Virus record (IMG/VR): IMGVR_UViG_3300043446_003193
Location: 1-64,000 of that record
Strand: one strand, 5' to 3'
DNA length: 64,000 bases
In this document: one piece after another, positions 5,477 through 20,432 of the stretch
Position numbering within the stretch: position 1 is the first letter of the stretch
Layout: every line of letters begins with the position of its first letter
Notes under the pieces: generated by a model
Database searches by the model: none
The model's input: only the letters and a program-made list of their open reading frames with translations
Told to the model about the DNA's origin: nothing
Position numbers and translations under genes: made by a program

Positions 5477-6751
5477 CTACCAAACGATAGTTTCTTCATC
5501 AGTTACATTGTCCTCAACCTCATTGAAAAGTTGAGTTTCTTCATCTGATTTAATATATTTTTGTAGCAATTGAGTCATAAATACTCTCTCACTATCCAAC
5601 CCACCATCATTACTGAAATAAGGTAAGATTGCGATTTGTGCAGCTTCAAACAAACTGAAACCGTCGTAAACCAATCCAGCAGCTTCTACATTCACACGAG
5701 TAGAAACGATAGTTGAAATCTTACTTGCATCAGTTTTGATTAACTGGCGAGTCGTATCGGCAATCTCTGCCAATGCGTTTAATGAATACTCATCAGCTTC
5801 AGGGAACTTAAACTTCAATAACGCAAGTTCGTTTTCCTTATCTAGCAAGTCCATTTCAATTTGAACAAAACGGTCCATCAATGCTCTATCCATTACACGA
5901 GTTGCAGTGTACTCACCACCGATATTCGCGGTTGCGATAAATGTAACACCACTTGCTACTTTAACGATTGGTGAACCTTCGGCCTCATCTAATCGTAAAT
6001 ATCTTTGACCCTGATCTAACACAGTCATTAAGATATTAGCGGCTTCTGGGTGAGCTCTACTCAATTCATCCAATAGGATAATTGCGTTTGGAGTTTTGAT
6101 TGCTTTAACGAATGCCGATTCACTAAAGAAAGTACCATTCTCTTTGTTAAAGTGAGTGTTACCGATTAAGGTTGCTCTAGCATCTTGCGTAGCACCTAAG
6201 TTAAAGTAGAAATCAGGTCGTTTCAATGATTTAACCAACGATTGAGCGGCTAATGTTTTACCACAACCGGTCGGTCCTGTCATTAAGATATTCTTACCTC
6301 TAACTGCTGAACGGAGTAAATACTTCCACTTCAATTCTTCAATGAACAATCCATTAGGTTTTAATTCTTTACCTTTTGTATGGATAAATTCTTTTAAAGC
6401 ATCGTGAGTTTCAAATGATTCACTTACACTATCACATGCTTCATCCGATATTGTAGCAGAATGTTTTTTGAACTCATCAATTTCAACTAACTTATAAGAT
6501 AGTTTACCATTTTTACTTATGTACGCTTGGATAGCTTTGTTTTCAGCTTCTGCTTGTTTCATCTTAGCTGAACTAATACCCGCAACTTTTGTTACAGGTT
6601 GATTTTGTGTTGTCAACATACCGAATGTACGTCCCAACTTAATTACTTTATAGATTTCATTTGTGAAACCTACATTAAAGTCCTTGACTTTAGTTGATTT
6701 TCTTTTTACCATAGTAGTAGTTTTACTTTTGTTACTTTGATTTCTACGCAT
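5477..6751 (-). CDS. MoxR/CbbQ/NirQ-type AAA+ ATPase
   Basis: Walker A GPTGCGKT, Walker B ILLDELSR, FIATANIG, DRALMDRF. Confidence 0.9.
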   Translation of the reverse strand: MRRNQSNKSKTTTMVKRKSTKVKDFNVGFTNEIYKVIKLGRTFGMLTTQNQPVTKVAGISSAKMKQAEAENKAIQAYISKNGKLSYKLVEIDEFKKHSATISDEACDSVSESFETHDALKEFIHTKGKELKPNGLFIEELKWKYLLRSAVRGKNILMTGPTGCGKTLAAQSLVKSLKRPDFYFNLGATQDARATLIGNTHFNKENGTFFSESAFVKAIKTPNAIILLDELSRAHPEAANILMTVLDQGQRYLRLDEAEGSPIVKVASGVTFIATANIGGEYTATRVMDRALMDRFVQIEMDLLDKENELALLKFKFPEADEYSLNALAEIADTTRQLIKTDASKISTIVSTRVNVEAAGLVYDGFSLFEAAQIAILPYFSNDGGLDSERVFMTQLLQKYIKSDEETQLFNEVEDNVTDEETIVW

Positions 6752-6779
6752 AACTTTATTGTTTATTTATTGGTGATTT

Positions 6780-6900
6780 GATACTCAAATATACGACTTT
6801 TTTTTGATACTACCAAATCTATTTATAATTGATTGATTTCTAATGACTTATAGGCATAAAAAAAGGGTAATATATAACCCTTTGATTATCAATAAGTTAT
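6780..6900. repeat. duplicated intergenic element, copy 1 (copy 2 at ~9280-9410)
   Basis: Shared AATATACGACTTTTTTTTGATACTACCAAAT, AGGCATAAAAAAAG and two TTGAnnnTCAATnAnTT motifs 49 bp apart in both copies. Confidence 0.8.
6786..6817 (-). promoter_or_regulatory. Bacteroidota sigma-A-type promoter (upstream of the MoxR gene)
   Basis: Minus strand TTTG-N20-TATATTTG matches the -33 TTTG / -7 TAnnTTTG consensus; near-identical copy at ~9283-9314. Confidence 0.75.
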
Positions 6901-6944
6901 GAAAGGGGACCAGAAAGTCCCCATTTCATTGGGGCTTTCCGAGC

Positions 6945-9236
6945 CTATTTTTTGTTTTTTGATAGGAATAACTCGTTCATAGTTTTGGCAACTTCAAACA
7001 TATTTTCCACATTCACGTACTTAGCATCATTTCCATACATTTTTTTGAAAATTTGCCAATCGGATGAATGTTCAAAATTACTACCATAATCAGTAATAAA
7101 GTAAGAAAGTACATCTATACCATTATCTTTGATTTTGGTCACTTGCTTTTTTGTGTGAACTGCTGCAGGTTCACCCGAATAATGCATATCATCACTACCT
7201 CTACTGATTGAGTAAGAAGGTTGTCCGTCAGAAAAGTTTAAGAAATAACTTTGACTATCATTTGTTGATGGAACTAAGTTTTTCAATATTGCTTCAAAAC
7301 ACAAACCTTCTGGTGTAGTATTACTTGCTTGCAATATACCCATATATTTTGCGAATTGTTTAAATGAGTCTCTACGAGAATCGTGGATAATTGCAACATA
7401 TGGTAAACAATTACCACCACTATCGGTAGAACGAATTGAAACTTGTACATTGATATTACGAGCCATTTCACATGCTTTTACAATAGCGACGGTTGATACA
7501 ATACACTTTCTTAACTTATCACCTTGCATTGAACCGGAATAGTCAATTGATATGTGTAAGTTTGCTTTCTTAAACTGGTCAACTTCATTTGTATAAAACA
7601 CGTTCTCATTATCATAACCTAATGAAGCAACCATTCTACCGTCAATCTTACCACGTTTCAATCTACTGAATATCGTTTCACGACTTTCACTACGAACTTG
7701 CAGTTTCTTACCCAATAGAGTACCTAACATTGTACCCTTACGAACTTCCTCTTCTGCCCATATCTTTGGCTCACCTGTTCTCCAATCGTTATTAGAGAAC
7801 GGAAAGTCTTCGGATTTTAATAGATTTTCTGTCAATCGTTTTACTACGATACAGTCTACACCTTTCATTTGTGTACCATATCTATCCATACCATTACCTA
7901 CACGAACCAATTCGGTATCTGATTCTTGAATGTCTTTTAGTTTTTCCAACTCGCTCTTTTGAACATTCTTCTTTTTGATATTACCATTGATGAAGTCCTT
8001 TTGCTTTTGGATTTTCTTATCCAATTGTTTTTTAGCAGTATCGGATAACTTCACTTTAGTATTACCTTGCTGACCCTGTCCATCATCAGTATTACCCAAT
8101 TTAGCAGTCGCTTGTCCACTAACATTTCCATTTCCACCGCCCATTTCACTGCCATTATCTTCACTATCACCATCTTCAATTTCAGTAATCTCTACTTCGT
8201 TCTCATCTCCATCACCACTTTGTCCTTTACCCAATCCTTTACCTTTCATCATCTCTGCGTTTTCGTAAGGAACGGTTTTAAGTATCTCAGCAAGAATGTC
8301 AATAGATAATTGGAAACTATCTTTGGTTGATGTCAAACGGCTAATATCTTTTAGGTTTACCATACGATATATGGCTCTCAAACCTTTTAACTTAGATAGG
8401 TCAGTTTTTTCGTTCATCAAGTTGATAATACGGAACATATAGGCTTCAAACGTCTCATCCGTATATTCATCACTTGCGATACCTTTGGTAACGATTTTAT
8501 CATTGAAATAGTTATCATACATTTGAGTATAATAATCTCTATAACCAGGTGCTGATTTGAAAATATACATATCAATACGTCTATCTTCTACCCAATTAGT
8601 AAGAGAACTGATGATACCGAATATTTCTTCATTCATTGAACCTTTACTACCAATCACACCGGTAGACAAATACATCTCATTGAATAGATTTTCGTATTTT
8701 GGGTATTGTTTAGTATATCCTTTGATAGTATCATCTATTTTATCAATAGTCCAACTCGGTGTTGTGATACCATTTGCAATTTCATTTGCAGTATCACTCA
8801 TAATCTTTCGTTGTAATCTTTGATAGTTACTAAACATTTCGTTCATATTAGATAACAGATCAAAGTCAGATAATAGAATGTGTGAACCTTCGTGCAATGC
8901 TAAACCAACTGAAACGTCAAATTTATCATCTACATCTGCAGAAAGGATAACTTTTTTACCATCCGTTTTACTATCACTTTTTGTAGCGAATGTAACAGGT
9001 ATATTCTTTTGTGTAACGATTTGAACGAAATTGGCAATAGCTCGTCTTACGGATGCCAACTTATAAAGGTTATTAGTTTTTTTGAAAAGGTCTAAATCCT
9101 TCTTTTGGAAACCACCATAGGTTTCTAATACATCATACGAAGTATCGTAATCATCATACCAAAATGATGATACTTTACTTTTCGCGTTGACTAGGTAATC
9201 TTTTGTACCCGTCTTAAAATTCTCATACCAACTCAT
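6945..9236 (-). CDS. vWA-domain protein with N-terminal HEXXH domain (MoxR partner, CobT-like)
   Basis: GLALHEGSH; MIDAS DYSGS, NTTPEG, FSDG. Confidence 0.85.
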   Translation of the reverse strand: MSWYENFKTGTKDYLVNAKSKVSSFWYDDYDTSYDVLETYGGFQKKDLDLFKKTNNLYKLASVRRAIANFVQIVTQKNIPVTFATKSDSKTDGKKVILSADVDDKFDVSVGLALHEGSHILLSDFDLLSNMNEMFSNYQRLQRKIMSDTANEIANGITTPSWTIDKIDDTIKGYTKQYPKYENLFNEMYLSTGVIGSKGSMNEEIFGIISSLTNWVEDRRIDMYIFKSAPGYRDYYTQMYDNYFNDKIVTKGIASDEYTDETFEAYMFRIINLMNEKTDLSKLKGLRAIYRMVNLKDISRLTSTKDSFQLSIDILAEILKTVPYENAEMMKGKGLGKGQSGDGDENEVEITEIEDGDSEDNGSEMGGGNGNVSGQATAKLGNTDDGQGQQGNTKVKLSDTAKKQLDKKIQKQKDFINGNIKKKNVQKSELEKLKDIQESDTELVRVGNGMDRYGTQMKGVDCIVVKRLTENLLKSEDFPFSNNDWRTGEPKIWAEEEVRKGTMLGTLLGKKLQVRSESRETIFSRLKRGKIDGRMVASLGYDNENVFYTNEVDQFKKANLHISIDYSGSMQGDKLRKCIVSTVAIVKACEMARNINVQVSIRSTDSGGNCLPYVAIIHDSRRDSFKQFAKYMGILQASNTTPEGLCFEAILKNLVPSTNDSQSYFLNFSDGQPSYSISRGSDDMHYSGEPAAVHTKKQVTKIKDNGIDVLSYFITDYGSNFEHSSDWQIFKKMYGNDAKYVNVENMFEVAKTMNELFLSKNKK

Positions 9237-10853: not shown

Positions 10854-11333
10854 TTATTTATACTTTTTCATTAAATTCCATCTATTGTGTCTTTCTTCTT
10901 CACTTAACTCCTGTGTAAAAGTGTGTTCAATATCTACTTTGACACATACTTCTGGTAATTTACAATTTTTAAGGTAATTGTTTATATATCCAATAATATT
11001 TGCCGCTCCTATCGGATTTGCAGAATGAACATATATTGTTGGTAGTGGTATTCCACTATTCATTGATTCTGCTACTAAAAATCTTGCACAATCCATTCCT
11101 GTTTTTTCAGGTATACGATTGTAGTCCAATTCGTAGTTTTGTTTTGTGTGAGTATAGTATTCAATCAATGCTCCCTCACCCAAATCATGATCCAAACTGA
11201 TTACTTCATATGCACCCAATCCTTTTAATTTGATATGTGATACAAACTCATCATAGTTTCTTACTACTTCCCAATTATCAGTTTTTGGTATTCGGACATC
11301 ATCTAAATATAACCATATTTTATCTTTTCTCAT
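10854..11333 (-). CDS. cyclic-phosphate-processing receiver-domain-like protein
   Basis: LYLDDVR, ISLDHDLG, KTGMDCA, VHSANPIG pattern. Confidence 0.75.
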   Translation of the reverse strand: MRKDKIWLYLDDVRIPKTDNWEVVRNYDEFVSHIKLKGLGAYEVISLDHDLGEGALIEYYTHTKQNYELDYNRIPEKTGMDCARFLVAESMNSGIPLPTIYVHSANPIGAANIIGYINNYLKNCKLPEVCVKVDIEHTFTQELSEEERHNRWNLMKKYK

Positions 11334-12108
11334 TATCTATAAATTCTAATTGTCTACTAATAAAATCATAATCAAAGGTAATTGGTTCATTATATACTTC
11401 ATATCTTAAATTACAAGAGCATCCATTAAACGCATAACAATCTCCCCAACTATCTTTATAAGGTATAGTTCCATACCCATACGCTTCGTGAATATGTCCG
11501 CTGAAATGTAAGTGTGGTTTTATTTCATGTATTCTATGATACAAGTCAGCACAACCTACATTTTGGTTTGTATTTGCAGCTCTATCACAATATCCATAAA
11601 TAGGTCCGTGTGTAATTACAATATCAGTATCATCTGGTATACCATTCCACACTTCGTTTATAGCATGCCCTCTATCTTTATTGAAAGCCCAACCATACCC
11701 AAATGAAGGTGTAATTGGAGACCCCCAAATTTTAATGTTATCTAAAGTAACAAAACTATTTTCTAAATAAAAAACATTTGGATTTAAACCACTTTCTAAT
11801 AAAAGACACAACCATTCTGGTTTACCTATAACAGGTGGTTCAAAATATTGTTTTCTATCAAAGTGGACAGATTTATCTCTATACAAAACTTCGGAATCAA
11901 ATATCGTATCGTGATTTCCTGCTATGAATATTTTGTACATGTAATTATCAATATCATTAAACCATTTAATGAAATCCTTAACTTCATGTTCTCTACCTAT
12001 TGATGAAATATCTCCACTATGAATGAGAATATCACCACCTGGCAACTTTCCATTTAGTTGCTTATGTTTATTGTGTGTATCGCTAATGTGCGTTATTCTC
12101 ATTTTCAT
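11320..12108 (-). CDS. metallophosphoesterase (calcineurin-like, MPPED type)
   Basis: ISDTH, HSGD, AGNHD, ITHGP, FSGHIHE motifs. Confidence 0.9.
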   Translation of the reverse strand: MKMRITHISDTHNKHKQLNGKLPGGDILIHSGDISSIGREHEVKDFIKWFNDIDNYMYKIFIAGNHDTIFDSEVLYRDKSVHFDRKQYFEPPVIGKPEWLCLLLESGLNPNVFYLENSFVTLDNIKIWGSPITPSFGYGWAFNKDRGHAINEVWNGIPDDTDIVITHGPIYGYCDRAANTNQNVGCADLYHRIHEIKPHLHFSGHIHEAYGYGTIPYKDSWGDCYAFNGCSCNLRYEVYNEPITFDYDFISRQLEFIDNEKR

Positions 12109-12675: not shown

Positions 12676-13305
12676 TTATGCTATCTTTGGAAATAAGATA
12701 TTTTCCATAAAGTATTTAGCTCTTTCTTCGCCTAATTTTGCCTTCAATACATTATAAGTTCTTTCGTTCTTTTGTTGGTTTTCACAATATCGGTTTTGAG
12801 CTGCTATAATATATTCAGTTCTACTTGCTTTTGGTTCTGCGTTTACTAAAATATCCATATATGCTGTAAAATTCTCAATAACTACTTCACTTAATTTATC
12901 CATTTCACTATCATTTGGTATAATTGCTAATGGTGTTGGTGAAAATATAATCTTTGCCCAATCAGGTAATGGATATTCTTTTTCAAATTTATGTGTTATT
13001 CTCATACCCAAAGAATTATCAACAGGCGACCAATCTAAAAATGCTGCCAATGGTTTCTTATCGGTAGTAATAATATCAAATCCAAAAATAGGAGTTTGGT
13101 ATATTGCATCTGGGAAACATGTAAAGTGTAATACTTCTAAATTATTATCACTATATCTTTCAATATGCGCAACTCTAAATTTATTACCTACATATCTTTT
13201 ATTCTTCCACCCAAAATCATCAGTATGTATTTCTATGCCATCATTTTCTTGTATCAAGACATGTAATTGACTTGCTATATTATCCAGTATTTTTTTGTAA
13301 CTCAT
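12676..13305 (-). CDS. pcyA: ferredoxin-dependent bilin reductase (PcyA/PcyX family)
   Basis: AHIERY...LEVLHFTCFP...PIFGFDII...DWSP...LPDWA..IFSP...QNRYCENQQKNERT...MENILFP. Confidence 0.8.
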   Translation of the reverse strand: MSYKKILDNIASQLHVLIQENDGIEIHTDDFGWKNKRYVGNKFRVAHIERYSDNNLEVLHFTCFPDAIYQTPIFGFDIITTDKKPLAAFLDWSPVDNSLGMRITHKFEKEYPLPDWAKIIFSPTPLAIIPNDSEMDKLSEVVIENFTAYMDILVNAEPKASRTEYIIAAQNRYCENQQKNERTYNVLKAKLGEERAKYFMENILFPKIA

Positions 13306-13789
13306 CTAATATGTTTATAATGTAATTAAATCCCTTATTAACTTCATCAGCCCATTCATCTTTTTGAATACTTCTTATACTACCAATCAATTCCATCATA
13401 TCACCATCAAACTCATACATCTTACCACTACCTGGAACTTTTGATTTCATCATTTGTCCACCAAACATAATTGCTAAATAGTTTAAGTAGATATGCGCAT
13501 TTAATTCATTTTGATTTAAATCACCTAAATAAACAAAATAATCTGTTGTTGATTTTAATATTGGAAATTTATATCCACCCAATTCGTTTATATCTTCCTG
13601 AATTTTAGATAGTCTTTTCAAACTATCATGTGGTAAATTTCTATTTTCTATTTCTTGGAAAATGTAAGATTGTTGAATTAGATAGTTTAAGTATTCATCA
13701 TTACTCAATTTACCCGCAAACATTCTTTGATTAAAATCCATCTTTTCTGCCTTACTATGTAATTCGGCAGTTGCTTCTCTTAAATTCAT
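13280..13789 (-). CDS. ho1: heme oxygenase (biliverdin-producing)
   Basis: LREATAELHSKAE (proximal His), AHIYLNYLAIMFGGQMM distal helix; adjacent to the bilin reductase. Confidence 0.85.
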   Translation of the reverse strand: MNLREATAELHSKAEKMDFNQRMFAGKLSNDEYLNYLIQQSYIFQEIENRNLPHDSLKRLSKIQEDINELGGYKFPILKSTTDYFVYLGDLNQNELNAHIYLNYLAIMFGGQMMKSKVPGSGKMYEFDGDMMELIGSIRSIQKDEWADEVNKGFNYIINILDELQKNTG

Positions 13790-13800
13790 ATTTTTAATTT

Positions 13801-13959
13801 TGCTGAAAGGGAAGGAGTTGAACCTTCAAAGGGAGATTCGGAAAGTAACACAATGCTTGCAAGCTGGTGGTCAACCCCATATTACTTTTCTATTTCTTTA
13901 TCCCCGCCCACGAGACGAGTGGGTGTGTCTGCCGTGCTTAAGCTTTTCACCACCTTTCA
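13801..13959 (-). ncRNA. expanded tRNA-like RNA (~159 nt)
   Basis: Acceptor TGAAAGG/CCTTTCA, T-arm GAAGG-TTCAACT-CCTTC, enlarged D loop, non-canonical anticodon loop TCGTCTC, very long variable region. Confidence 0.6.
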
Positions 13960-13965
13960 ATTTTG

Positions 13966-14053
13966 CGGAGAGTCAGGGATTTGAACCCCAGATACCTTTC
14001 GGGTATGCCAATTTTCAAGATTGGTGCGATAAACCAGACTCTGCCAACTCTCC
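13966..14053 (-). tRNA. tRNA-Ser(TGA)
   Basis: CCAAT-CT-TGA-AA-ATTGG, long variable arm, TTCAAAT T-loop. Confidence 0.95.
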
Positions 14054-14058
14054 TAATA

Positions 14059-14328
14059 CTAATAGATATGTGTTTCTTCGTTTCTGAAGTCTTTCGTATC
14101 TATTTCCATTTTATTTTGTCTTATTCTAGCTTCTTCTGCTCTTTTGACCATTCTTATCCAAGTTATAGATGCGTCAACAGGTGCCAAAACCCATGCCATC
14201 ATTAATACCATAATGGCATCTAATTCAGGAGATTGCCCAGTTGGATCAGGAGAATATCGTTTCTTATAAGTTTTAAATAACTGATAAAAACAATAAATAA
14301 CACAAAGTACATAATAAGTAACTAACAT
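14059..14328 (-). CDS. small membrane protein
   Basis: Two hydrophobic segments. Confidence 0.6.
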   Translation of the reverse strand: MLVTYYVLCVIYCFYQLFKTYKKRYSPDPTGQSPELDAIMVLMMAWVLAPVDASITWIRMVKRAEEARIRQNKMEIDTKDFRNEETHIY

Positions 14329-14560
14329 AACTTTTATTTTTATTTTTAAAATGAGTTTGTGAGGAATGAATCCAATTAAAAAAGGTTATCCAAATTTCAA
14401 AGAGGTTTGAGTTTATTGAAATAGCTGACAAGAGACCCTAATATTATTGAAGTTTGTTAATAATTCATTTATCTTATTCGTTCATCCGCTTGGTTGCTCA
14501 CAAGTAGTATTGCAAGAATAAACTAATCAATCAGTTTCAAACCCCACTCACTCAATATTT

Positions 14561-14989
14561 TTATATTTGTGTGTTTGCATTGTGAATATCCAATTCGTTT
14601 TGCAACTCTTCAATTCTTTCACTTAACACATCCACTTTGTTTTGAATATCCACCACATTCAATTCCACTTCTTTTACCGAAATAACACTTCCATATCTTT
14701 CAGCCACTTTACCTTCTTCGGTTGGAACTTTCTTTAATTCCTTTACCAATCCTTTCAATTCTGCTAATTCAAATATTTTAGCATATACCGGTTGATTTGC
14801 TTTATGGATTTTTGCTTTCAACTCAACTAACTCCAATTGAATCGTTTCAATTACCGTCAATGTAACGGACATTGAATATCTACGTGGGTTTCCTTCTTCA
14901 ATTGAGTTATACTTTTTCAAAATCTCATATTGAGCTTTCAAATCAGTAACCAATTTGTTTTTTTGTTTTAATGCTTGTTTTACATTCAT
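14561..14989 (-). CDS. coiled-coil protein (DIP1984-like)
   Basis: MNVKQALKQKNKL...IEELQNELDIHNANT pattern; own promoter at ~15010-15041. Confidence 0.55.
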   Translation of the reverse strand: MNVKQALKQKNKLVTDLKAQYEILKKYNSIEEGNPRRYSMSVTLTVIETIQLELVELKAKIHKANQPVYAKIFELAELKGLVKELKKVPTEEGKVAERYGSVISVKEVELNVVDIQNKVDVLSERIEELQNELDIHNANTQI

Positions 14990-15130
14990 TTTTTTAGGTT
15001 TTAATATTTTAAATATACAAATAATTTTTCAAATTACCAAATAAAAATAAGCAGGTGTGGAGTCACCTACTTATTTTAGTGAATGAGAAACATCTGAATC
15101 TCTTTGTGGCTGTATCACCAAAGCCCATTC

Positions 15131-15239
15131 GGTGCCAGAGGAGGGTCTGGTTACCCACACGGTGTCCATTTCGGATTCACCACCCACCTAGGAAGGGAAC
15201 GTCTAATAGTTGTACACACTATCATTCCGCCACTCTGGC
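15131..15239 (-). ncRNA. degenerate tRNA-like RNA
   Basis: Acceptor GCCAGAG/CTCTGGC-A, D-arm TGGCGGAA..TAGACG with inserted hairpin, long variable arm, no TTC T-loop. Confidence 0.55.
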
Positions 15240-15244
15240 ATATG

Positions 15245-15331
15245 TGCCCCGAGCAGGATTTGAACCTGCACCCGTATTTTCGCCGGACAGCATTTTAAGT
15301 GCTGCGAGTCTACCAATTTCTCCATCGGGGC
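15245..15331 (-). tRNA. tRNA-Leu(TAA)
   Basis: CAGCA-CT-TAA-AA-TGCTG, long variable arm. Confidence 0.95.
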
Positions 15332-15336
15332 AAACT

Positions 15337-15777
15337 CTATTTTATATTTCTCGCTCTATATGTGTTAGTTTGCGAATGACAATTAGGACAAATTATTCTT
15401 AAATTTTCTAATCTATGATTTGTTCTATCACCATCAATATGGTCTAATTCAAATGAAACTGGTTTATTGTTCCATTTTAGTATACCACACACTTCACATT
15501 TTTCCTGTTTAATACTTTCTTTAATCAATCTAATTCTTAATTTATTAGTTTGATATTGTGGATGTTTTCCATCTAGTATTTCAGAAAGAGCTATTTTATC
15601 AAATCCATCTTTTTTTGGTTTTTTTATTCCTTTTCCAGATTGATTTATTTTATAACATCCCAATTTAACAGCTCTATTTTTTAGAGTATTAAAATGAATA
15701 CCAAGTTCAGCTGCAGCTTTTGCCATTGAAATTGATTTTTTACACATTTTAATTATTTCATCATCATTTACTTTCAT
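15337..15777 (-). CDS. HNH endonuclease with N-terminal HTH
   Basis: CEVCG...FELDHIDGDRTNHRLENLRIICPNCHSQT. Confidence 0.9.
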   Translation of the reverse strand: MKVNDDEIIKMCKKSISMAKAAAELGIHFNTLKNRAVKLGCYKINQSGKGIKKPKKDGFDKIALSEILDGKHPQYQTNKLRIRLIKESIKQEKCEVCGILKWNNKPVSFELDHIDGDRTNHRLENLRIICPNCHSQTNTYRARNIK

Positions 15778-15818
15778 ATTGATTTTAATAATAAGTATAT
15801 GACATGATAGAAAAACAA

Positions 15819-16403
15819 TCAATTGTGTATAACTATCTCAATTGGTTTTCCCAAATAATCAATATCACATTCAGTCCAAAGTTGTTCTGACATAGATATT
15901 GAAATTTTTGCAGAATATGGTAGATTATTATTCTTACCTACCCAACCGGTTAGTTTTCCTTTTTTAGAAAATGTTTCAATCCAATTTAATTTTGAATAAT
16001 CAATTAGTGACGAATCAAACTGAATTAAATAGTATTTTCTAATTCCTTTTTTCCACTCTCCTTTATTCCTACCCAACATTATATATGTATCACAATGTTT
16101 TTTAGAAATAAAATTTATTTTATCTTTTATAGTTTCATGTGAAGTAGTTCTATGACCACTCCAAGTTATACTACCTTTCTTATGATTTATATCCCCACTT
16201 TTGTTTTGATAATTCGTTCCATCTGCTTCCGATACAACATCCGTTCCAACATCATGTCCACCTACATTCCAATTTGAATCCATCCCATTTATACATTGGT
16301 CAAAAATATCTTCCCACAATTCCGCTTTGACAGGAAATCGGTATAACTGATGATGTAACTTTATCTTTTCTTCTATCTTCTTAACAATATCTTTCTTTAT
16401 CAT
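15819..16403 (-). CDS. hypothetical protein, possibly PD-(D/E)XK nuclease-like
   Basis: ELWEDIF...GTDV...YQNKSG spacing resembles a restriction-like fold; weak. Confidence 0.45.
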   Translation of the reverse strand: MIKKDIVKKIEEKIKLHHQLYRFPVKAELWEDIFDQCINGMDSNWNVGGHDVGTDVVSEADGTNYQNKSGDINHKKGSITWSGHRTTSHETIKDKINFISKKHCDTYIMLGRNKGEWKKGIRKYYLIQFDSSLIDYSKLNWIETFSKKGKLTGWVGKNNNLPYSAKISISMSEQLWTECDIDYLGKPIEIVIHN

Positions 16404-16417
16404 ATATAAACCGTTTG

Positions 16418-16491
16418 TGATTCGGAATGGATTCAAACCATTGACCCACAGCTTAGAAGGCTGTTGCTCTATTCAACTGAGCTACCGAACC
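16418..16491 (-). tRNA. tRNA-Arg(TCT)
   Basis: ACAGC-CT-TCT-AA-GCTGT. Confidence 0.95.
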
Positions 16492-16571
16492 TAATAAAAC
16501 ACAATCATCTCACAATCTTCAGATGCTAGCGGTTGCCGAGCTAATTGCATATACAACCGAATTGTGTTTTG

Positions 16572-16645
16572 CGGAACGTAGGGGACTTGAACCCCTGGCC
16601 TCTGCCGTGACAGGGCAGCGTTATAACCAACTTAACTAACGTTCC
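16572..16645 (-). tRNA. tRNA-Asp(GTC)
   Basis: CTGCC-CT-GTC-AC-GGCAG. Confidence 0.95.
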
Positions 16646-16704
16646 AATTTGTAGGTGGGACTAACCTACTTCGGTTTTGTACTTCAACCATTTAAGTCCT
16701 TTTG

Positions 16705-16777
16705 AGCCTCCGGTCAGACTTGAACTGACGACCTGCTGATTACAAATCAGCTGCTCTACCAACTGAGCTACAAAGGC
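16705..16777 (-). tRNA. tRNA-Thr(TGT)
   Basis: GCTGA-TT-TGT-AA-TCAGC. Confidence 0.95.
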
Positions 16778-17001
16778 ATTTAGGAAAGTAGAGGATGGGT
16801 GCGTGGACAACTACTTTTATGATTGGCTTTACTAACCGATAGTAGCGTATTAGATTTTCACTAACTCGTTTTAGCGGGCTACTTTTGTTCCCAATCAACC
16901 TATATGGTCGGTAAGAGGTAGTCACGGCTACTTCTATTCCCTCTTACCTATTCATACACTAACGGCTAAATGTAGCACGACCGAGTGTGATGTATGATGT
17001 G

Positions 17002-17073
17002 TACTCCCAACGGGATTTGAACCCGTGCTACCACTGTGAAAGAGTGGTGACCTAACCCCTAGTCCATGGGAGC
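17002..17073 (-). tRNA. tRNA-Glu(TTC)
   Basis: CCACT-CT-TTC-AC-AGTGG. Confidence 0.95.
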
Positions 17074-17085
17074 GACTGATAAATC

Positions 17086-17117
17086 AAATATACAACTAAT
17101 ATTTTACTTTACCAAAT
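17086..17117 (-). promoter_or_regulatory. internal Bacteroidota-type promoter between tRNA-Leu(TAG) and tRNA-Glu
   Basis: Minus strand TTTGGTAAAG...GTTG-TATATTTG. Confidence 0.7.
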
Positions 17118-17122
17118 ATTTG

Positions 17123-17204
17123 TACCCAAAGAGAGATTTGAACTCTCAAGCCTTTCGGCACTGGTTTCTAAGACCAGCGTGTCTGCCAGTTCCACCATTC
17201 GGGT
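17123..17204 (-). tRNA. tRNA-Leu(TAG)
   Basis: CTGGT-CT-TAG-AA-ACCAG. Confidence 0.95.
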
Positions 17205-17209
17205 TGATG

Positions 17210-17298
17210 CGGAAAGTGTAAGATTTGAACTTACGATACAATTTGATTCGTATGGCAGTTTAGCAAACTGCTGGTTTCAGCCACTCACCCAACTTTCC
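17210..17298 (-). tRNA. tRNA-Ser(GCT)
   Basis: GCAGT-TT-GCT-AA-ACTGC, long variable arm. Confidence 0.95.
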
Positions 17299-17301
17299 GA
17301 T

Positions 17302-17376
17302 TGGGGTGTTAGAACGGTACTGCCCCGTCTTATCTAGCTCCACAAACTAGCGCATCACTTTAATGCTTCAAACACC
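17302..17376 (-). tRNA. tRNA-His(GTG)
   Basis: CTAGT-TT-GTG-GA-GCTAG; atypical T-loop GGCAGTA. Confidence 0.85.
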
Positions 17377-17381
17377 ATTTG

Positions 17382-17451
17382 AGGTTAGTGTTAGAATTGA
17401 ACTAACTCCGTGAGATTTGCAGTTTCACCGGCCGCCACGACCTAACTAACC
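17382..17451 (-). tRNA. tRNA-Cys(GCA)
   Basis: Anticodon loop CT-GCA-AA, short D arm. Confidence 0.85.
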
Positions 17452-17457
17452 ATTTTG

Positions 17458-17529
17458 TAGCCCCTAAAGGATTTGAACCCTTACTAAAACATCCGTAGTG
17501 TTTCGTGCTGTCCGTTACACCAAAGAGCT
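17458..17529 (-). tRNA. tRNA-Arg(ACG)
   Basis: AAACA-CT-ACG-GA-TGTTT. Confidence 0.9.
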
Positions 17530-17534
17530 ATTTG

Positions 17535-17605
17535 CACCCATCGTAGGATTTGAACCCACATCAACGGTTTTGGAGACCGGTATGCTACCATTGCACCAGA
17601 CGGAT
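17535..17605 (-). tRNA. tRNA-Trp(CCA)
   Basis: CCGGT-CT-CCA-AA-ACCGT. Confidence 0.9.
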
Positions 17606-17666
17606 GTATTATATTTTATAGTTTCTATGTCAGTTTTAACCTTACATCATTACTATAAAACATGTG

Positions 17667-17739
17667 TAGGAATAATAGGACTTGAACCTATGACTTTTGA
17701 CGTATCAGATCAACGCTCTACCAACTGAGCTATATTCCT
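17667..17739 (-). tRNA. tRNA-Ile(GAT)
   Basis: TTGAT-CT-GAT-AC-GTCAA. Confidence 0.95.
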
Positions 17740-17744
17740 ATTTG

Positions 17745-17818
17745 TTGGGAATGCAGGATTTGAACCTACGGCCTCTTGCTCCCAAAGCAAGCGCGATACC
17801 TGACTACGCTAATTCCCA
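17745..17818 (-). tRNA. tRNA-Pro(TGG)
   Basis: CTTGC-TT-TGG-GA-GCAAG. Confidence 0.95.
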
Positions 17819-17823
17819 ATATG

Positions 17824-17894
17824 TTGCTCCTCATGGATTTGAACCACAACTAGATGCTCCAAAAACACCTGTGCTACCGTTACACCAAAGAGCA
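17824..17894 (-). tRNA. tRNA-Gln(TTG)
   Basis: GGTGT-TT-TTG-GA-GCATC. Confidence 0.9.
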
Positions 17895-17900
17895 ATTTTG

Positions 17901-17972
17901 AGCGGGTGAGAGGAATCAAACCTCCGTCTCCTACTTGGAAGGAAGGAGTAATAATCATTATACGACACCCGC
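17901..17972 (-). tRNA. tRNA-Gly(TCC)
   Basis: CCTTC-CT-TCC-AA-GTAGG. Confidence 0.9.
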
Positions 17973-17982
17973 TTATGTTTTG

Positions 17983-18054
17983 CGCTTTCCGAGAATTACG
18001 ATATCTCGCCCCCATCGTTAACAGCGATGTGCTCTGCCTCTGAGCTAGGAAAGC
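17983..18054 (-). tRNA. tRNA-Asn(GTT)
   Basis: CATCG-CT-GTT-AA-CGATG. Confidence 0.9.
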
Positions 18055-18401
18055 TTTTGTTTTTCTATTTCATCATGTATTTCCATGTGACAATTACAAC
18101 ATACTAAAATACATTTATCTAATTCTTTTTTCATTTTTTCCCAACTTATACTAGGTCTTGATAAAGAATATTCTTTTTCACTTGGTTCTAAATGATGGAA
18201 TGCTAATGCTCTATTACATTTATCATATCCACATTTTTCACATTTACCACCTTTGTATTCAATCGCTTTGATTTTCATTTTATCTCTACGATTAGATACT
18301 GAAATAGATGCACATTTTTTACATCTATACGCACCATCTACTCTTAATACAAATTCAGTTTTTCCATGTGTTTTACATTCTTTAATTTCTGTCTTATTCA
18401 T
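18045..18401 (-). CDS. HNH endonuclease
   Basis: CKTHG, CKKC, CEKCG...LAFHHLEP...CILVCCNCHMEIH. Confidence 0.85.
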   Translation of the reverse strand: MNKTEIKECKTHGKTEFVLRVDGAYRCKKCASISVSNRRDKMKIKAIEYKGGKCEKCGYDKCNRALAFHHLEPSEKEYSLSRPSISWEKMKKELDKCILVCCNCHMEIHDEIEKQKLS

Positions 18402-18461
18402 AATATTCTTTATTATAAATATATTTGATTAACATTTTAAGTTAATCATTTATAGTTTTTG

Positions 18462-18542
18462 TGGGAGCAGAAGGACTTGAACCTACGAACTCAATGAGGG
18501 CGGATTTACAGTCCGCTGCAATTGCCACTATGCGATGCTCCC
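18462..18542 (-). tRNA. tRNA-Tyr(GTA)
   Basis: GCGGA-CT-GTA-AA-TCCGC, variable arm. Confidence 0.95.
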
Positions 18543-18581
18543 AAAACAAAAAACCCCAACTTAATTAAAAGTCAGGGTTTT
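18543..18581 (-). terminator. intrinsic terminator (putative attenuator 3:4 hairpin) immediately before tRNA-Tyr
   Basis: AAAACCCTGACTT-TTAATT-AAGTTGGGGTTTT followed by TTGTTTT. Confidence 0.8.
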
Positions 18582-18613
18582 CCATAAATTATTTAAAATA
18601 GACGTTCCTAACT

Positions 18614-18682
18614 TTACATACGAATACCACCCCAAATCTGATTCGGTGTACTACAAAGTGTATGTAATGTTAAGTTTTTCAT
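18614..18682 (-). CDS. putative attenuator leader peptide MKNLTLHTLCSTPNQIWGGIRM
   Basis: Manual translation; A-rich start context; overlaps alternative hairpins and precedes the terminator and tRNA array. Confidence 0.7.
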   Translation of the reverse strand: MKNLTLHTLCSTPNQIWGGIRM

Positions 18683-18699
18683 TTTTATTTTTTTTTAAG

Positions 18700-18970
18700 T
18701 AATTCAATTTCAAAATACGCCATCCAAGTCATGCTCTGGTTATTATCAGCCTCATCAAATTACTTTGTACACAAGCAGAGTTTAGAGGGAGGCGGTAACT
18801 CTTTGTAGTGTACTGCTACTAATCCGGCAATCTTTTATCGTCTCTGATTGCATTTTTATTGTGAAAATCCTCCCTAAAACACTTATTACCAATTTTATTA
18901 TATCGTTCTATCTTTTAGGTCATTTAAACGAACCGACTGTTGAATAAGAAACAGCCAAAAGGTTGACCAC
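18700..18970 (-). ncRNA. unassigned structured RNA region
   Basis: AGGGAGG/CCTCCCT, GCAATC/GATTGC, GTACAC/GTGTAC, GGTCA/TGACC and GGCTGTT/AACAGTC complementarities; no long ORF. Confidence 0.4.
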
Positions 18971-18974
18971 GAAA

Positions 18975-19047
18975 GAGCGAATGTGGGAATTGAACCCTAT
19001 CTTCCACCCCGTTAAGAGTGGTGTGCTTCCGTTACACTATATTCACT
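18975..19047 (-). tRNA. atypical tRNA with 8-nt anticodon loop (CTTAACGG); identity undetermined
   Basis: Acceptor AGTGAAT/ATTCGCT, D-arm GTGTAACGGAAGCAC, stem CCACT/GGTGG, T-loop TTCAATT. Confidence 0.6.
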
Positions 19048-19049
19048 TA

Positions 19050-19935
19050 AAATGAGTGAGATTACCTCATTGGGAGTACCAACTTTAGAAAGATTATTTG
19101 TTTCCTTTCCTATCCACTACCTTTTGAGTAGTACCGATACAATGTGGATGATTTGAGACTATCAGTCTTTGAGTTACGTCTTACTCTCTTTATACTCCGC
19201 TTCTTCAAATCTGCCGACCTGATTAAACCTTGCGGGTTTAGAAGTTTTTCCAAAGAATCACAGACCTCTTGCGGAGGTATCGTGGCAAGGAACAGCTCCC
19301 TACTATGTACACACCTTTCGTCCGTAACTGGCAAACACTTATGCTTTTATTTAAATTGAATAATCAAATCCGCATTTGATAAAAGGGTTGGTTTGTAGAT
19401 GGGTTCAGGTAGCGGTTTGCCAACCAGCTCCCTCAACTTTTGGCCGAGAGAATACTGAACTACCCGATGTGTTATCGTCAACACCATTTTTCAAGTCATC
19501 TTCATTAATAGGGATTGGTGTCCCACATTAAAGGTTAGTAACAACACCACTTGTACACCAACATACCTTACGTCCTTTCGGATAGCTTGGTTTTAAGACC
19601 ACTCTTAAATTGAATACCGCAATAGTGTAAAGTGATTAGCCTTACATTTCTTACAGGTATTCTATGGGTTATTCTTATTGTTCTTCCGAACTCAACCGAA
19701 GTATCTACTTACCCCGGTTATTCAAACTCTTCCGATATAGTGTTACCCTTTCGTACAAAGCTCAAATAATATCCCACTTGCATACTTAAGTTATTCTCTC
19801 CTTACGGGGAGAGTAACCGCAGATTGTGTAAACCTAACAATCCACTTTATCCTACTTTCGTAGTTTATTTGACGACCATATGCGGCCGTTGTTTACTATG
19901 TAGAAAAATCTACTATGTAAAATATTTTCAATCTT
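19050..19935 (-). ncRNA. large structured ncRNA, GOLLD-like
   Basis: ~870 nt with no convincing ORF, GC richer than flanks, many GNRA-capped hairpins (CCTCC-GCAA-GAGG, AAACCC-GCAA-GGTTT, CTAC-GAAA-GTAG); size and tRNA-cluster setting fit GOLLD. Confidence 0.55.
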
Positions 19936-19956
19936 TTAAAGAACTATTCGTTTTAA

Positions 19957-20342
19957 TAAATATAACAATAATTTTTTTTATTACCAAATATTTTTAAAAC
20001 TTTTTTTGTAAACTTGATAACGAGTATCTTTCATCACCTATTGTTTCTCATTTACTTATGTAATATACGATAATTTTTTTAAACTACCAAATATATTTTC
20101 AAAAAACTTTTAAGATGTTTGGTATCCGGCTTTCTTCCCTATTGGATAGGTCACTCAATCGGTTTTATTATTTGATGGCTTCAACCAATCATCTTAAATG
20201 TAAGATACGATAATTTTTTCAAACTACCAAATCTTTTTTATTTTTTTGTTGAACATTTTCGGCTGTGTTTACTTACACCATTTAATACTTCCTACTTCTG
20301 AACAACTTTGTAAAGATACGAAAACTTTTTCAAATTTCCAAA
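19957..20342 (-). promoter_or_regulatory. four tandem Bacteroidota-type promoters separated by short hairpin-forming units
   Basis: TTTGG(T/A)A-N-TAT(A/C)TT motifs at ~19957-19988, 20060-20091, 20200-20231 and 20311-20342. Confidence 0.7.
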
Positions 20343-20351
20343 TCTTTTTTG

Positions 20352-20424
<73 letters not shown>

Positions 20425-20432
20425 ATATTATG

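What the first reader, a model, noticed from the sequence alone, without database searches (positions are those of the whole stretch)
12676..13789. Heme oxygenase plus PcyA-type bilin reductase in a phage with Bacteroidota-type promoters
Seen: an overlapping ho-FDBR pair. The reductase keeps residues aligning to PcyA Glu76 (HIE), His88 (LHF) and Asp105 (FGFD). Established: such cassettes are known from cyanophages (ho1-pcyA/pebS) and from uncultured phages (hemO-pcyX). No photosynthesis or phycobiliprotein genes occur in this window, and the promoters point to a non-cyanobacterial host. Inference: bilin production for an unknown acceptor (phytochrome or signalling), or iron release and heme detoxification.
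Basis: partly seen in the sequence, partly recalled or inferred. Interest (0 to 1): 0.65.

Follow-up and report, generated by a model that had tools for sequence, protein, structure and literature searches.

The report
Phage heme-to-phycocyanobilin gene pair
A 209-kb freshwater T4-like phage, probably infecting a Bacteroidota bacterium rather than a cyanobacterium, carries two overlapping genes predicted to turn heme into the blue pigment phycocyanobilin; such cassettes are already known in other phages, so this adds a lineage and a likely host, not a new kind of system.

Summary
On the minus strand, a 169-aa heme oxygenase (13280-13789) overlaps a 209-aa ferredoxin-dependent bilin reductase (12676-13305) by 26 nt. 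Both score well above the Pfam cut-offs and fold with high confidence (pLDDT 94.8) onto HO and PcyA structures. Both are under purifying selection.

The reductase carries Glu49/His60/Asp77/Glu181. This matches the signature of PCB-making PcyA from Bradyrhizobium and from freshwater phage CB_2. It differs from the Asp/His/Asp/Pro signature of PEB-making phage PcyX.

The complete genome has no ferredoxin, flavodoxin, psbA, phycobiliprotein, GAF, CpeT or AlaS gene.

The "Bacteroidota-type promoter" argument does not hold. Strict TAnnTTTG is not enriched, and the real promoter, TTGGTA-N17-TATATT, fits an ordinary sigma-70 pattern equally well.

A Bacteroidota host is still likely, on other evidence. 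Genes lack Shine-Dalgarno sites and have an adenine peak at -14 to -11, as in Flavobacterium johnsoniae and Flavobacterium phage immuto. Microcystis, Synechococcus and SAR11 phages do not show this.

Verdict: a new, abundant freshwater clade of a known phage hemO-pcyA cassette. Its physiological role is still open.

The parts
13280..13789 (-). Compact heme oxygenase gene (169 aa). It has proximal His11 and distal-helix Gly110-Gly111. Ile107 sits where human HO-1 has Asp140.
   Evidence: Pfam PF01126 E 8e-14. AF2 pLDDT 94.8, and the fold matches HmuO/HO-1 at TMq 0.81-0.86. H11, G110 and G111 are invariant in 40 homologues. 1,266 homologues were found; the 120 listed are mostly 163-177 aa. dN/dS 0.10-0.30.
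12676..13305 (-). Compact ferredoxin-dependent bilin reductase gene of PcyA type (209 aa), with Glu49, His60, Asp77 and Glu181.
   Evidence: Pfam PF05996 E 3e-28. PDB sequence hits: PcyX 5OWG at 6e-23 and PcyA 2D1E at 8e-17. AF2 pLDDT 94.8, and the fold matches PcyA 2G18 at TMq 0.88. The clade signature is E-H-D-(E/Q/D), against D-H-D-P in 48 PcyX-like sequences. dN/dS 0.10-0.42.
13280..13305 (-). 26-nt overlap of the HO stop with the FDBR start. The ATG lies inside GATGAG of the HO frame. Translational coupling is inferred.
   Evidence: Sequence read. An overlap of 23-41 nt is kept in all 12 related loci, and most PcyX-type viral loci also overlap.
15012..15040 (-). Putative operon promoter TTGGTA-N17-TATATT. 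It is one of 13 copies of the repeated early-type promoter TTTGG(T/A)A...TATATT. No terminator-like site lies on the minus strand between it and the cassette.
   Evidence: Co-transcription with the cassette is inferred, not shown.
15044..15077 (-). Terminator-like hairpin just upstream of that promoter, marking the likely start of the transcription unit.

Best explanation
This is a self-contained two-gene auxiliary metabolic module of a complete 209-kb freshwater T4-like myovirus.

Gene 1 encodes a compact canonical heme oxygenase. It opens host heme b to biliverdin IX-alpha and releases Fe2+ and CO.

Gene 2 overlaps gene 1 by 26 nt and is probably translationally coupled to it. It encodes a compact ferredoxin-dependent bilin reductase with the full PcyA catalytic set (Glu49, His60, Asp77, plus Glu181). 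Its predicted reaction is the four-electron reduction of biliverdin to phycocyanobilin (PCB), not to phycoerythrobilin as in phage PcyX.

The phage encodes no ferredoxin, flavodoxin, lyase, phytochrome or phycobiliprotein. Electrons and any bilin acceptor must therefore come from the host.

The pair appears to be transcribed from a host-RNA-polymerase-type (early) promoter.

The host is most likely a freshwater member of the Bacteroidota (about 0.7). The phage and all its cassette-bearing relatives use the Shine-Dalgarno-less, adenine-rich translation start typical of that phylum.

Shown: gene identity, fold, catalytic residues, conservation, purifying selection, absence of partner genes, and the translation-signal pattern.

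Inferred: enzymatic activity, PCB as the product, early co-transcription, and the host.

My commitment on the physiological role is weak, about 0.45. I think the reduced bilin itself is the selected product and acts on a host-encoded acceptor. Iron release or heme removal is the main alternative, at about 0.35.
For: Family and fold:
- establish the families and folds.

Catalytic signature:
- E49/H60/D77/E181 align to PcyA Glu76/His88/Asp105/Asp220.
- Table 2 of PMC13446030 gives PcyA BRADO1265 as Glu/His/Asp/Glu and PcyX as Asp/His/Asp/Pro.
- The FDBR of phage CB_2, shown to make PCB, is 207 aa and reads AHVE, VVH, GFD and QNEHT, the same E-H-D-E pattern.
- The active CB_2 HemO is 174 aa and also lacks the distal Asp, reading LGYMYGGQ.

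Module conservation:
- HO and FDBR are the only genes shared by all 12 related loci.
- The overlap is conserved, and dN/dS is 0.1-0.4.

No phage partner genes in the whole genome:
- Fer2, Photo_RC, Phycobilisome, GAF, AlaS-type aminotransferase, CpeT, flavodoxin, ferrochelatase and Fer4 are all absent.

Host:
- Genes with an SD-like 4-mer upstream: 10% in this phage and 3% in 12 related loci. The controls are 6% for Flavobacterium phage immuto, 37% for Microcystis phage Mel-JY01, 29% for Synechococcus phage S-CRM01, 57% for Pelagibacter phage Mosig, and 61% for 67 PcyX-type loci of equal GC content.
- The adenine peak at -14 to -11 matches F. johnsoniae (PMC6847099).
- 60 proteins are shared with immuto.

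Habitat:
- The window's DNA (nearly all sampled words) is held only by two runs of one freshwater sample, probably its source. Partial matches (17-29% of words), i.e. relatives, occur in runs of 12 further studies, mostly freshwater metagenomes and five labelled fungus metagenome.
Against: - No enzyme assay was done, and product prediction from catalytic residues has failed before in FDBRs. PMC13446030 notes that single substitutions can switch the product.
- By sequence, the best PDB hit is PcyX rather than PcyA.
- The HO lacks the distal Asp that is essential in human HO-1. The active CB_2 HemO lacks it too.
- The closest cultured relative by DNA polymerase (48.7% identity) infects Microcystis. 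This phage group therefore spans host phyla, and the host here is inferred from a translation signal only. No CRISPR, prophage or co-occurrence link was obtained.
- No RNA run holds the locus, so expression is unshown.
- No PCB acceptor is known to me in Bacteroidota (own knowledge).
Confidence: 0.62

Rival explanations
1. The enzymes work as stated, but the benefit to the phage is heme breakdown itself. That could mean iron release for phage iron enzymes, or removal of heme or CO signalling. On this view the reductase only clears biliverdin so the oxygenase can turn over, and the identity of the bilin does not matter.
For: - No bilin acceptor, lyase or photoreceptor is encoded anywhere in the genome.
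- No third gene travels with the pair.
- Iron supply is the role discussed in the literature for phages of non-photosynthetic hosts (PMC11480375).
- The phage encodes a ribonucleotide reductase. Whether it uses iron was not tested.
Against: - The product-determining residue is fixed differently in the two phage clades: Glu in 21 of 21 sequences and Asp in 48 of 48.
- The reductase is under purifying selection.
- Heme oxygenase alone would release the iron, yet the reductase is kept next to it in nearly every locus.
Confidence: 0.35
2. The reductase is functionally a PcyX-like or other non-PcyA enzyme and makes phycoerythrobilin, phytochromobilin or a dihydrobiliverdin.
For: - The best PDB sequence match is PcyX 5OWG, at 6e-23 against 8e-17 for PcyA.
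- With midpoint rooting the clade sits nearer PcyX than cyanophage PcyA.
- FDBR products are hard to predict from sequence (PMC13446030).
Against: - All four signature positions match PCB-making PcyA of Bradyrhizobium and phage CB_2.
- None matches the PcyX-specific Asp or Pro.
- The fold is closest to PcyA, at TMq 0.88 against 0.70 for PcyX.
Confidence: 0.2
3. The host is a cyanobacterium, as for the relative Mel-JY01, and the cassette tops up phycobilisome chromophores as in cyanophages.
For: - Microcystis phage Mel-JY01 is the closest cultured relative: DNA polymerase 48.7%, tail sheath 45.9%, and 62 shared proteins.
- PCB is the main cyanobacterial chromophore.
Against: - The complete genome has no psbA, phycobiliprotein or CpeT gene.
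- Mel-JY01 itself has no FDBR.
- Mel-JY01 and S-CRM01 use Shine-Dalgarno sites (37% and 29%, with a G peak), whereas this phage does not (10%, with an A peak).
Confidence: 0.07
4. The host is another freshwater heterotroph, for example an alphaproteobacterium such as LD12/SAR11 or a methanotroph, as for Mosig and CB_2.
For: - All previously described non-cyanophage carriers of the cassette infect or are predicted to infect Alphaproteobacteria.
- The low GC content (31.8%) would fit LD12.
Against: - Mosig and 67 PcyX-type loci of the same GC content use Shine-Dalgarno sites (57-61%), unlike this clade (3-10%).
- Only 15 proteins are shared with Mosig.
- The phage tmRNA matches the one-piece model, whereas Alphaproteobacteria have two-piece tmRNA. 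This is own knowledge and weak evidence.
Confidence: 0.15

Closest known systems
vHemO and vPcyA of freshwater phage CB_2 (Chen et al. 2020; Wegner et al. 2024, PMC11480375)
   Same: - It is a freshwater large phage of a non-cyanobacterial host.
- It has a compact HemO (174 aa against 169 aa here) without the distal Asp.
- It has a compact FDBR (207 aa against 209 aa here) with the same Glu/His/Asp/Glu signature.
- The two proteins are collinear by eye with the window's proteins.
- Both CB_2 enzymes were shown to be active, and the product is PCB.
   Different: - The CB_2 genes are one gene apart and come with alaS and pmoC. Here the two genes overlap, and no AlaS-type gene was found in the genome. 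pmoC was not searched.
- The predicted CB_2 host is Methylocystis.
- Clade-specific 5-mers of the window protein are absent from that paper's sequence files.
- Identity and tree position relative to CB_2 were not computed, because the sequence exists only as supplement text.
hemO-pcyX cassette of marine pelagimyophages (PcyX EBK42635, PDB 5OWG; Pelagibacter phage Mosig)
   Same: The gene order is the same, HO then FDBR, usually overlapping, in T4-like myoviruses of non-photosynthetic hosts. PcyX is the best PDB sequence hit.
   Different: - Identity is 33-36%.
- PcyX proteins are 225-245 aa.
- The signature is Asp/His/Asp/Pro in 48 of 48 sequences, and the product is PEB.
- The linked HO keeps the distal Asp (LGDLSGGQ).
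- The carrier phages use Shine-Dalgarno sites.
Cyanophage pcyA and ho1 (P-SSM4, P-RSM4, S-TIM4 and others)
   Same: These are also PcyA-type reductases carried as phage auxiliary genes.
   Different: Identity is 25-34%. They fall in a separate clade. In the two cyanophage loci read here (P-RSM4, P-SSM3), no annotated HO lies next to pcyA. Cyanomyophages commonly also carry psbA (own knowledge).
PcyA of Bradyrhizobium sp. ORS278 (BRADO1265) in the hemO-pcyA-alaS-bphP island
   Same: The four-residue signature Glu/His/Asp/Glu is identical, and the enzyme makes PCB in a bacterium without phycobilisomes.
   Different: It is a cellular protein and much longer. It sits beside a phytochrome that uses the PCB, and no such acceptor is present here.
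Pre-PcyA clusters of heterotrophic bacteria with BBAG globins (Rockwell et al. 2023, PMC10151467)
   Same: These are FDBRs of the PcyA/PcyX lineage in non-photosynthetic bacteria, often next to an HO.
   Different: Pre-PcyAs lack the Glu76 and His88 equivalents, which the window protein has. No globin/phycobilisome-type protein was found here; Fe-S (Fer2, Fer4) searches were also blank. V4R was not searched.

Membership tests
Ferredoxin-dependent bilin reductase (Pfam PF05996) | Profile match above the curated cut-off | tested here: met
   99.5 bits against a cut-off of 31, E 3e-28; 97 bits in the genome search.
Ferredoxin-dependent bilin reductase (Pfam PF05996) | The alpha/beta/alpha sandwich fold of FDBRs | tested here: met
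   AF2 pLDDT 94.8 and pTM 0.91. Foldseek gives PcyA 2G18 at TMq 0.88, E 2e-15, followed by PcyX, PebB, PebA, HY2 and PebS.
PcyA (phycocyanobilin:ferredoxin oxidoreductase) | Catalytic triad Glu76, His88, Asp105 (Synechocystis numbering) | tested here: met
   E49, H60 and D77 by HMMER alignment to 2D1E. H60 and D77 are invariant, and E49 is conserved in all 21 clade members.
PcyA (phycocyanobilin:ferredoxin oxidoreductase) | [quoted passage not shown] | not testable with these tools
   This needs an enzyme assay. The CB_2 enzyme with the same signature makes PCB (PMC11480375).
PcyA (phycocyanobilin:ferredoxin oxidoreductase) | Phylogenetic placement with characterised PcyA (cyanobacterial, alphaproteobacterial or CB_2) | tested here: inconclusive
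   The tree contains only phage sequences. The window clade is a third clade, separate from cyanophage PcyA and PcyX. Cellular PcyA and CB_2 could not be added by reference.
PcyX (phage PEB synthase) | Asp at the Glu76 position and Pro at the Asp220 position | tested here: not met
   The window has Glu49 and Glu181. All 48 PcyX-like viral sequences have Asp and Pro (Table 2 of PMC13446030).
Pre-PcyA | Absence of the Glu76 and His88 equivalents | tested here: not met
   Both residues are present (definitions).
Canonical heme oxygenase (Pfam PF01126) | Profile match, helical HO fold, proximal His and distal Gly-Gly | tested here: met
   52.3 bits against a cut-off of 23. TMq 0.81-0.86 to HmuO, HO-1 and Synechocystis HO-1. 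H11, G110 and G111 are invariant.
Canonical heme oxygenase (Pfam PF01126) | Distal-helix Asp (human HO-1 Asp140, HmuO Asp136) | tested here: not met
   Ile107 (LAIMFGGQ) in the window and I/L in its clade. The experimentally active CB_2 vHemO also lacks it (LGYMYGGQ), so this does not argue against activity.
Phage hemO-FDBR auxiliary cassette | HO immediately upstream of the FDBR on one strand, in a phage genome | tested here: met
   26-nt overlap. The genome is a T4-like myovirus with DNA polymerase, tail sheath and fibres. The same layout occurs in the 12 related loci and in most of the roughly 60 PcyX-type loci where both genes were found; five have them 463-2,217 nt apart.
Phage of a Bacteroidota host | Translation starts without Shine-Dalgarno sites, with an adenine peak at -14 to -11 | tested here: met
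   10% of genes have an SD-like 4-mer. A frequency is 0.54-0.74 at -14 to -11, almost identical to Flavobacterium phage immuto. Four phages of other hosts and the PcyX-type loci behave differently. Reference pattern: PMC6847099.
Phage of a Bacteroidota host | Bacteroidota sigma-A promoter consensus TTTG (-33) and TAnnTTTG (-7) | tested here: inconclusive
   Strict TAnnTTTG is not enriched and shows no strand bias. The 13 TTTGG(T/A)A...TATATT promoter matches (11 are the TTTGGTA form) fit TTGnnA-N17-TATAnT equally well, and the final G is present in only 3 of the 12 I read (own reading).
Phage of a Bacteroidota host | Direct host link (CRISPR spacer, prophage or culture) | not tested
Relatives cannot be drawn for a virus record.

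The most novel reading that the evidence does not exclude
Phycocyanobilin made by the phage in a non-photosynthetic Bacteroidota cell is the chromophore or ligand of a host-encoded, or unrecognised phage-encoded, bilin-binding protein. This would make infection by this abundant freshwater phage lineage light-responsive or redox-responsive. It would be a bilin signalling function outside phototrophs, and it could be tested in culturable Flavobacterium systems.
Probability: 0.15. Interest if true: 0.8.

Novelty: new member of a known kind. Interest (0 to 1): 0.42.

Why it matters
Why phages of non-photosynthetic bacteria keep a heme-to-bilin pathway is an open question. The known carriers infect SAR11 or are predicted to infect methanotrophs, and both host groups are hard to work with.

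This clade is large. More than 400 reductase homologues and more than 1,200 oxygenase homologues were found, and its Atlas cluster has 1,434 members. It is found mainly in freshwater and appears tied to Bacteroidota-type hosts. Flavobacterium phage-host pairs are readily cultured, which could make the question experimentally approachable.

The clade also supplies two very compact enzymes, 169 and 209 aa, for making PCB in heterologous hosts.

Tried and rejected
- **Strict Bacteroidota -7 motif test.** TAnnTTTG is not enriched and shows no strand bias. I rejected it as host evidence.
- **TATATTTATA motif.** It occurs 50 times on the coding strand and 6 on the other. It is shared with immuto and Mel-JY01, whose hosts belong to different phyla, so it marks the phage lineage and not the host.
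- **Scan of 185,579 species genomes for the FDBR.** It returned one 2.9-kb contig labelled Anaerolineales. That contig is a PcyX-type HO-FDBR fragment nearly identical to an IMG/VR viral contig, so it is probably mis-binned. The degenerate patterns were narrow, so this blank says little about cellular relatives.
- **T9SS sorting domain as a Bacteroidota marker.** It gave only a sub-threshold hit of 14 bits, which I disregarded.
- **Expression.** No RNA run holds the locus.
- **Conserved RNA upstream of HO.** No consensus structure was found across 10 loci.
- **A conserved third gene next to the pair.** None was found.
- **Literature.** No paper links bilin reductase, phage and Flavobacteria or Bacteroidota.
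- **Large representative protein search and complex prediction.** Neither was used. The family scans and the word search left neither protein open, and I make no binding claim.
- **Alignment with the CB_2 and Bradyrhizobium proteins.** I left it out because those sequences exist only as text in a paper supplement and have no reference. They were compared by eye only.
Full report
**What is there.** The window is the first 64 kb of a single 209,443-bp contig. It is an IMG/VR virus record that CheckV rates 100% complete, with 31.8% GC. Of 201 ORFs, 200 lie on the minus strand. PHROG hits to a T4-type family-B DNA polymerase, a DnaB-like helicase, ribonucleotide reductase, tail sheath and long tail fibres identify it as a T4-like myovirus.

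On the minus strand, ORF 13280-13789 (169 aa) matches Pfam Heme_oxygenase at E 8e-14. ORF 12676-13305 (209 aa) matches Fe_bilin_red at E 3e-28. The two overlap by 26 nt. The reductase ATG lies inside the GATGAG of the oxygenase frame.

**The reductase.** By sequence, the best solved relatives are phage PcyX 5OWG (E 6e-23) and Synechocystis PcyA 2D1E (E 8e-17). It also puts E181 on Asp220.

Table 2 of PMC13446030 lists these four positions:

| Enzyme | Position 1 | Position 2 | Position 3 | Position 4 |
|---|---|---|---|---|
| Cyanobacterial PcyA | Glu | His | Asp | Asp |
| Bradyrhizobium PcyA | Glu | His | Asp | Glu |
| PcyX | Asp | His | Asp | Pro |
| Pre-PcyAs | no Glu | no His | varies | varies |

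I collected 72 distinct phage FDBRs. All 21 members of the window's clade read E-H-D-(E/Q/D). All 48 PcyX-like sequences, including Pelagibacter phage Mosig, read D-H-D-P. A quick IQ-TREE run gives three well-separated clades: the window clade, PcyX and cyanophage PcyA. Identity falls from at least 55% inside the clade to at most 37% outside it.

The AlphaFold model is confident (pLDDT 94.8, pTM 0.91). It superposes best on PcyA, at TMq 0.88 against 0.70 for PcyX. The 209-aa protein is thus a complete, compact FDBR and not a fragment.

**The oxygenase.** The protein is short. All of its 1,266 homologues fall within the search's 93-296 aa length window, and the 120 listed are mostly 163-177 aa (a few 191-201). 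The model (pLDDT 94.8) covers the whole HO fold, at TMq 0.81-0.86 to HmuO, HO-1 and Synechocystis HO-1.

The proximal His11 and the distal Gly110-Gly111 are invariant. One difference stands out. Where human HO-1 has Gly139-Asp140, this clade has Ala-Ile/Leu (LAIMFGGQ). The oxygenases linked to PcyX keep LGDLSGGQ.

**Precedent.** The literature already contains the closest analogue. Freshwater large phages from Chen et al. 2020 carry ho1 plus a "pcyX-like" gene. For phage CB_2, whose predicted host is Methylocystis, Wegner et al. 2024 showed that vHemO makes biliverdin IX-alpha. They also showed that the FDBR is a true PcyA that makes PCB and can load a phytochrome.

The sequences printed in their supplement show the following:
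- CB_2 vPcyA is 207 aa and reads AHVE, VVH, GFD and QNEHT. This is the same E-H-D-E signature, and the protein is in the same compact length class as the window protein.
- CB_2 vHemO is 174 aa and reads LGYMYGGQ. An active phage oxygenase can therefore lack the distal Asp.

I compared these by eye only. They have no reference, so I did not type them into a tool. Five-residue words specific to the window clade do not occur in that paper's sequence files, so this clade was apparently not part of their data set.

**Is it maintained?** Among 12 related loci, the oxygenase and the reductase are the only genes shared by all. The overlap of 23-41 nt is kept. Pairwise dN/dS is 0.10-0.42 for the reductase and 0.10-0.30 for the oxygenase. 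The pair therefore behaves as a selected, self-contained module.

**What the phage does not have.** Whole-genome profile searches found none of the following:
- 2Fe-2S or 4Fe-4S ferredoxin
- flavodoxin
- photosystem reaction-centre protein
- phycobiliprotein or BBAG-type globin
- GAF domain
- CpeT lyase
- ferrochelatase
- AlaS-type aminotransferase

Positive controls fired in each search. Electrons and any bilin acceptor must therefore come from the host.

**Transcription.** Two promoter classes stand out. The motif TATATTTATA occurs 50 times on the coding strand and 6 on the other, mostly 5-60 nt upstream of start codons. It is shared with immuto and Mel-JY01 but not Mosig, which has the T4 late motif TATAAATA. 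It is therefore a marker of the phage lineage.

Thirteen copies of TTTGG(T/A)A-N17-TATATT form the second class. One copy sits at 15012-15040, just after a terminator-like hairpin. No terminator-like site follows on the minus strand down to the cassette. From this I infer, but have not shown, early co-transcription of the pair with a tRNA-Ser and neighbouring ORFs.

**Host.** Strict TAnnTTTG is found 15 times against 7.6 expected, and 14 times on the wrong strand. The second promoter class reads equally well as an ordinary sigma-70 -35/-10 pair. The closest cultured relative by polymerase and sheath is in fact a Microcystis phage, Mel-JY01, with 62 shared proteins. Flavobacterium phage immuto is almost as close, with 60 shared proteins, while Mosig shares 15.

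The translation signal does discriminate between hosts:

| Phage or locus set | Host | Genes with an SD-like 4-mer upstream | Upstream base peak |
|---|---|---|---|
| This phage | unknown | 10% | A 0.54-0.74 at -14 to -11 |
| 12 related cassette loci | unknown | 3% | A peak |
| immuto | Flavobacterium | 6% | same A peak |
| Mel-JY01 | Microcystis | 37% | G peak |
| S-CRM01 | Synechococcus | 29% | G peak |
| Mosig | SAR11 | 57% | G peak |
| 67 PcyX-type loci | mostly unknown | 61% | G peak |

GC content is the same in the two locus sets, 31.9% and 31.8%. Absence of Shine-Dalgarno sites with adenines at -14 to -11 is the published pattern of F. johnsoniae and the Bacteroidetes (PMC6847099).

The window's own DNA is held essentially only by two runs of one freshwater sample, probably its source. 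Runs from 12 further studies, mostly freshwater and five labelled fungus metagenome, hold 17-29% of its sampled words, i.e. relatives or conserved parts. I put a Bacteroidota host at about 0.7, a cyanobacterium at about 0.07, and other hosts at the remainder. No direct link such as a spacer, prophage or culture was obtained.

**How it most likely works.** Host heme is opened by the oxygenase to biliverdin IX-alpha, Fe2+ and CO. The coupled reductase uses host ferredoxin to reduce biliverdin by four electrons to PCB. The enzyme identities rest on tool results. The activity and the product are inferred from the catalytic signature and the CB_2 precedent.

What PCB does in a Bacteroidota cell is unknown. 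The product-determining residue is fixed differently in the two phage clades, and the reductase is always kept beside the oxygenase. For those reasons I lean, at about 0.45, to the bilin itself being the selected product for a host-encoded acceptor. The main alternative, at about 0.35, is iron release or heme removal, with the reductase merely clearing biliverdin.

**Verdict.** The finding is real and correctly read at the gene level. It is not a new kind of system. It is a new, large, mainly freshwater clade of the known phage hemO-pcyA cassette. Its catalytic signature and compact size match the characterised CB_2 pair (compared by eye). It probably sits in phages of Bacteroidota, a host phylum not reported for this cassette in the papers I could search.

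**Limits.** There was no enzyme assay, no expression data and no direct host link. The tree lacks cellular PcyA and CB_2. ORF starts in the translation-signal analysis are longest-ATG calls, applied identically to all my own ORF calls. For S-CRM01 the annotated starts were used instead.

Noticed in passing
window 19053-19467 (-): A full-length GOLLD RNA (Rfam RF02032, 267 bits against a gathering score of 150, model positions 1-416 of 416). It sits inside the phage tRNA array, next to an odd tRNA call at 18975-19046.
   Followed up: no
window 13965-20832 (-): An array of 19 tRNA genes plus a phage-encoded one-piece tmRNA (20430-20832, RF00023, 79.6 bits). An HNH endonuclease ORF (15337-15822) lies among the tRNAs. 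The cassette sits directly downstream of this array.
   Followed up: partly
window 13790-13964 (-): The 175-nt GC-rich spacer between tRNA-Ser and the HO start folds at -40 kcal/mol into a tRNA-like shape. It has a 7-bp acceptor stem (TGAAAGG/CCTTTCA), a T-arm (GAAGG-TTCAACT-CCTTC) and an insert of about 100 nt. By my reading of the alignment, the homologous element in L012 has compensatory changes in the acceptor stem (TGTATCG/CGATACA); RNAalifold reported no pairs. ARAGORN and Rfam do not call it. In L053 and L054 what looks by eye like an ordinary tRNA (GGTTCGAATCC T-loop) occupies this place.
   Followed up: partly
window 10854-12108 (-): A calcineurin-like metallophosphoesterase (11320-12108) is followed by a cREC_REC 'cyclic-phosphate processing receiver' protein (10854-11333, PF20274, E 4e-20). 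The pair is conserved downstream of the cassette in the closest relatives (L012-L017, L053, L054). It could process cyclic nucleotides or RNA ends.
   Followed up: no
window 5477-9236 (-): A CobS-like AAA ATPase (5477-6751, AAA_5 plus CbbQ_C) lies next to a 763-aa protein with a weak hit to phage 'cobalamin biosynthesis protein' (phrog_5298). They are 3.4 kb downstream of the reductase and syntenic in L012-L014. Together with the cassette this makes a second tetrapyrrole-linked gene pair in the same region.
   Followed up: partly
whole genome G000:C1; window examples at 50415, 47795, 42090, 40606, 39463: The motif TATATTTATA occurs 50 times on the coding strand against 6 on the other, mostly 5-60 nt before start codons. 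It is shared with Flavobacterium phage immuto and Microcystis phage Mel-JY01. The T4 late motif TATAAATA is used by Mosig instead. It is probably a lineage-specific middle or late promoter.
   Followed up: partly
G000:C1, 1-209443: 200 of 201 ORFs lie on one strand, and cumulative GC skew falls monotonically across the window. The immuto genome is similarly one-stranded (208 of 212).
   Followed up: no
L021 (DBHI01000039.1, 'Anaerolineales bacterium UBA832', 2,883 bp): This MAG contig carries an overlapping HO-FDBR pair with the PcyX signature D-H-D-P and is almost identical to IMG/VR contig L114. It is most likely a pelagiphage-type fragment binned into a bacterial MAG, not a Chloroflexota gene.
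   Followed up: partly
PP395634.1 (Microcystis phage Mel-JY01), loci L026-L035: Mel-JY01 has 34.4% GC. It shares about as many proteins with Flavobacterium phage immuto (52) as with this phage (62), yet it uses Shine-Dalgarno sites. This phage group therefore seems to have crossed between Bacteroidota and cyanobacterial hosts, and its translation signals follow the host.
   Followed up: partly
window 3443-4366 (-) and 24605-25240 (-): An SPFH/Band-7 protein (E 3e-21) and a DNA/RNA non-specific endonuclease (E 4e-33) are encoded in the window. A Band_7 gene also lies near the cassette in the 148-kb relative L010.
   Followed up: no
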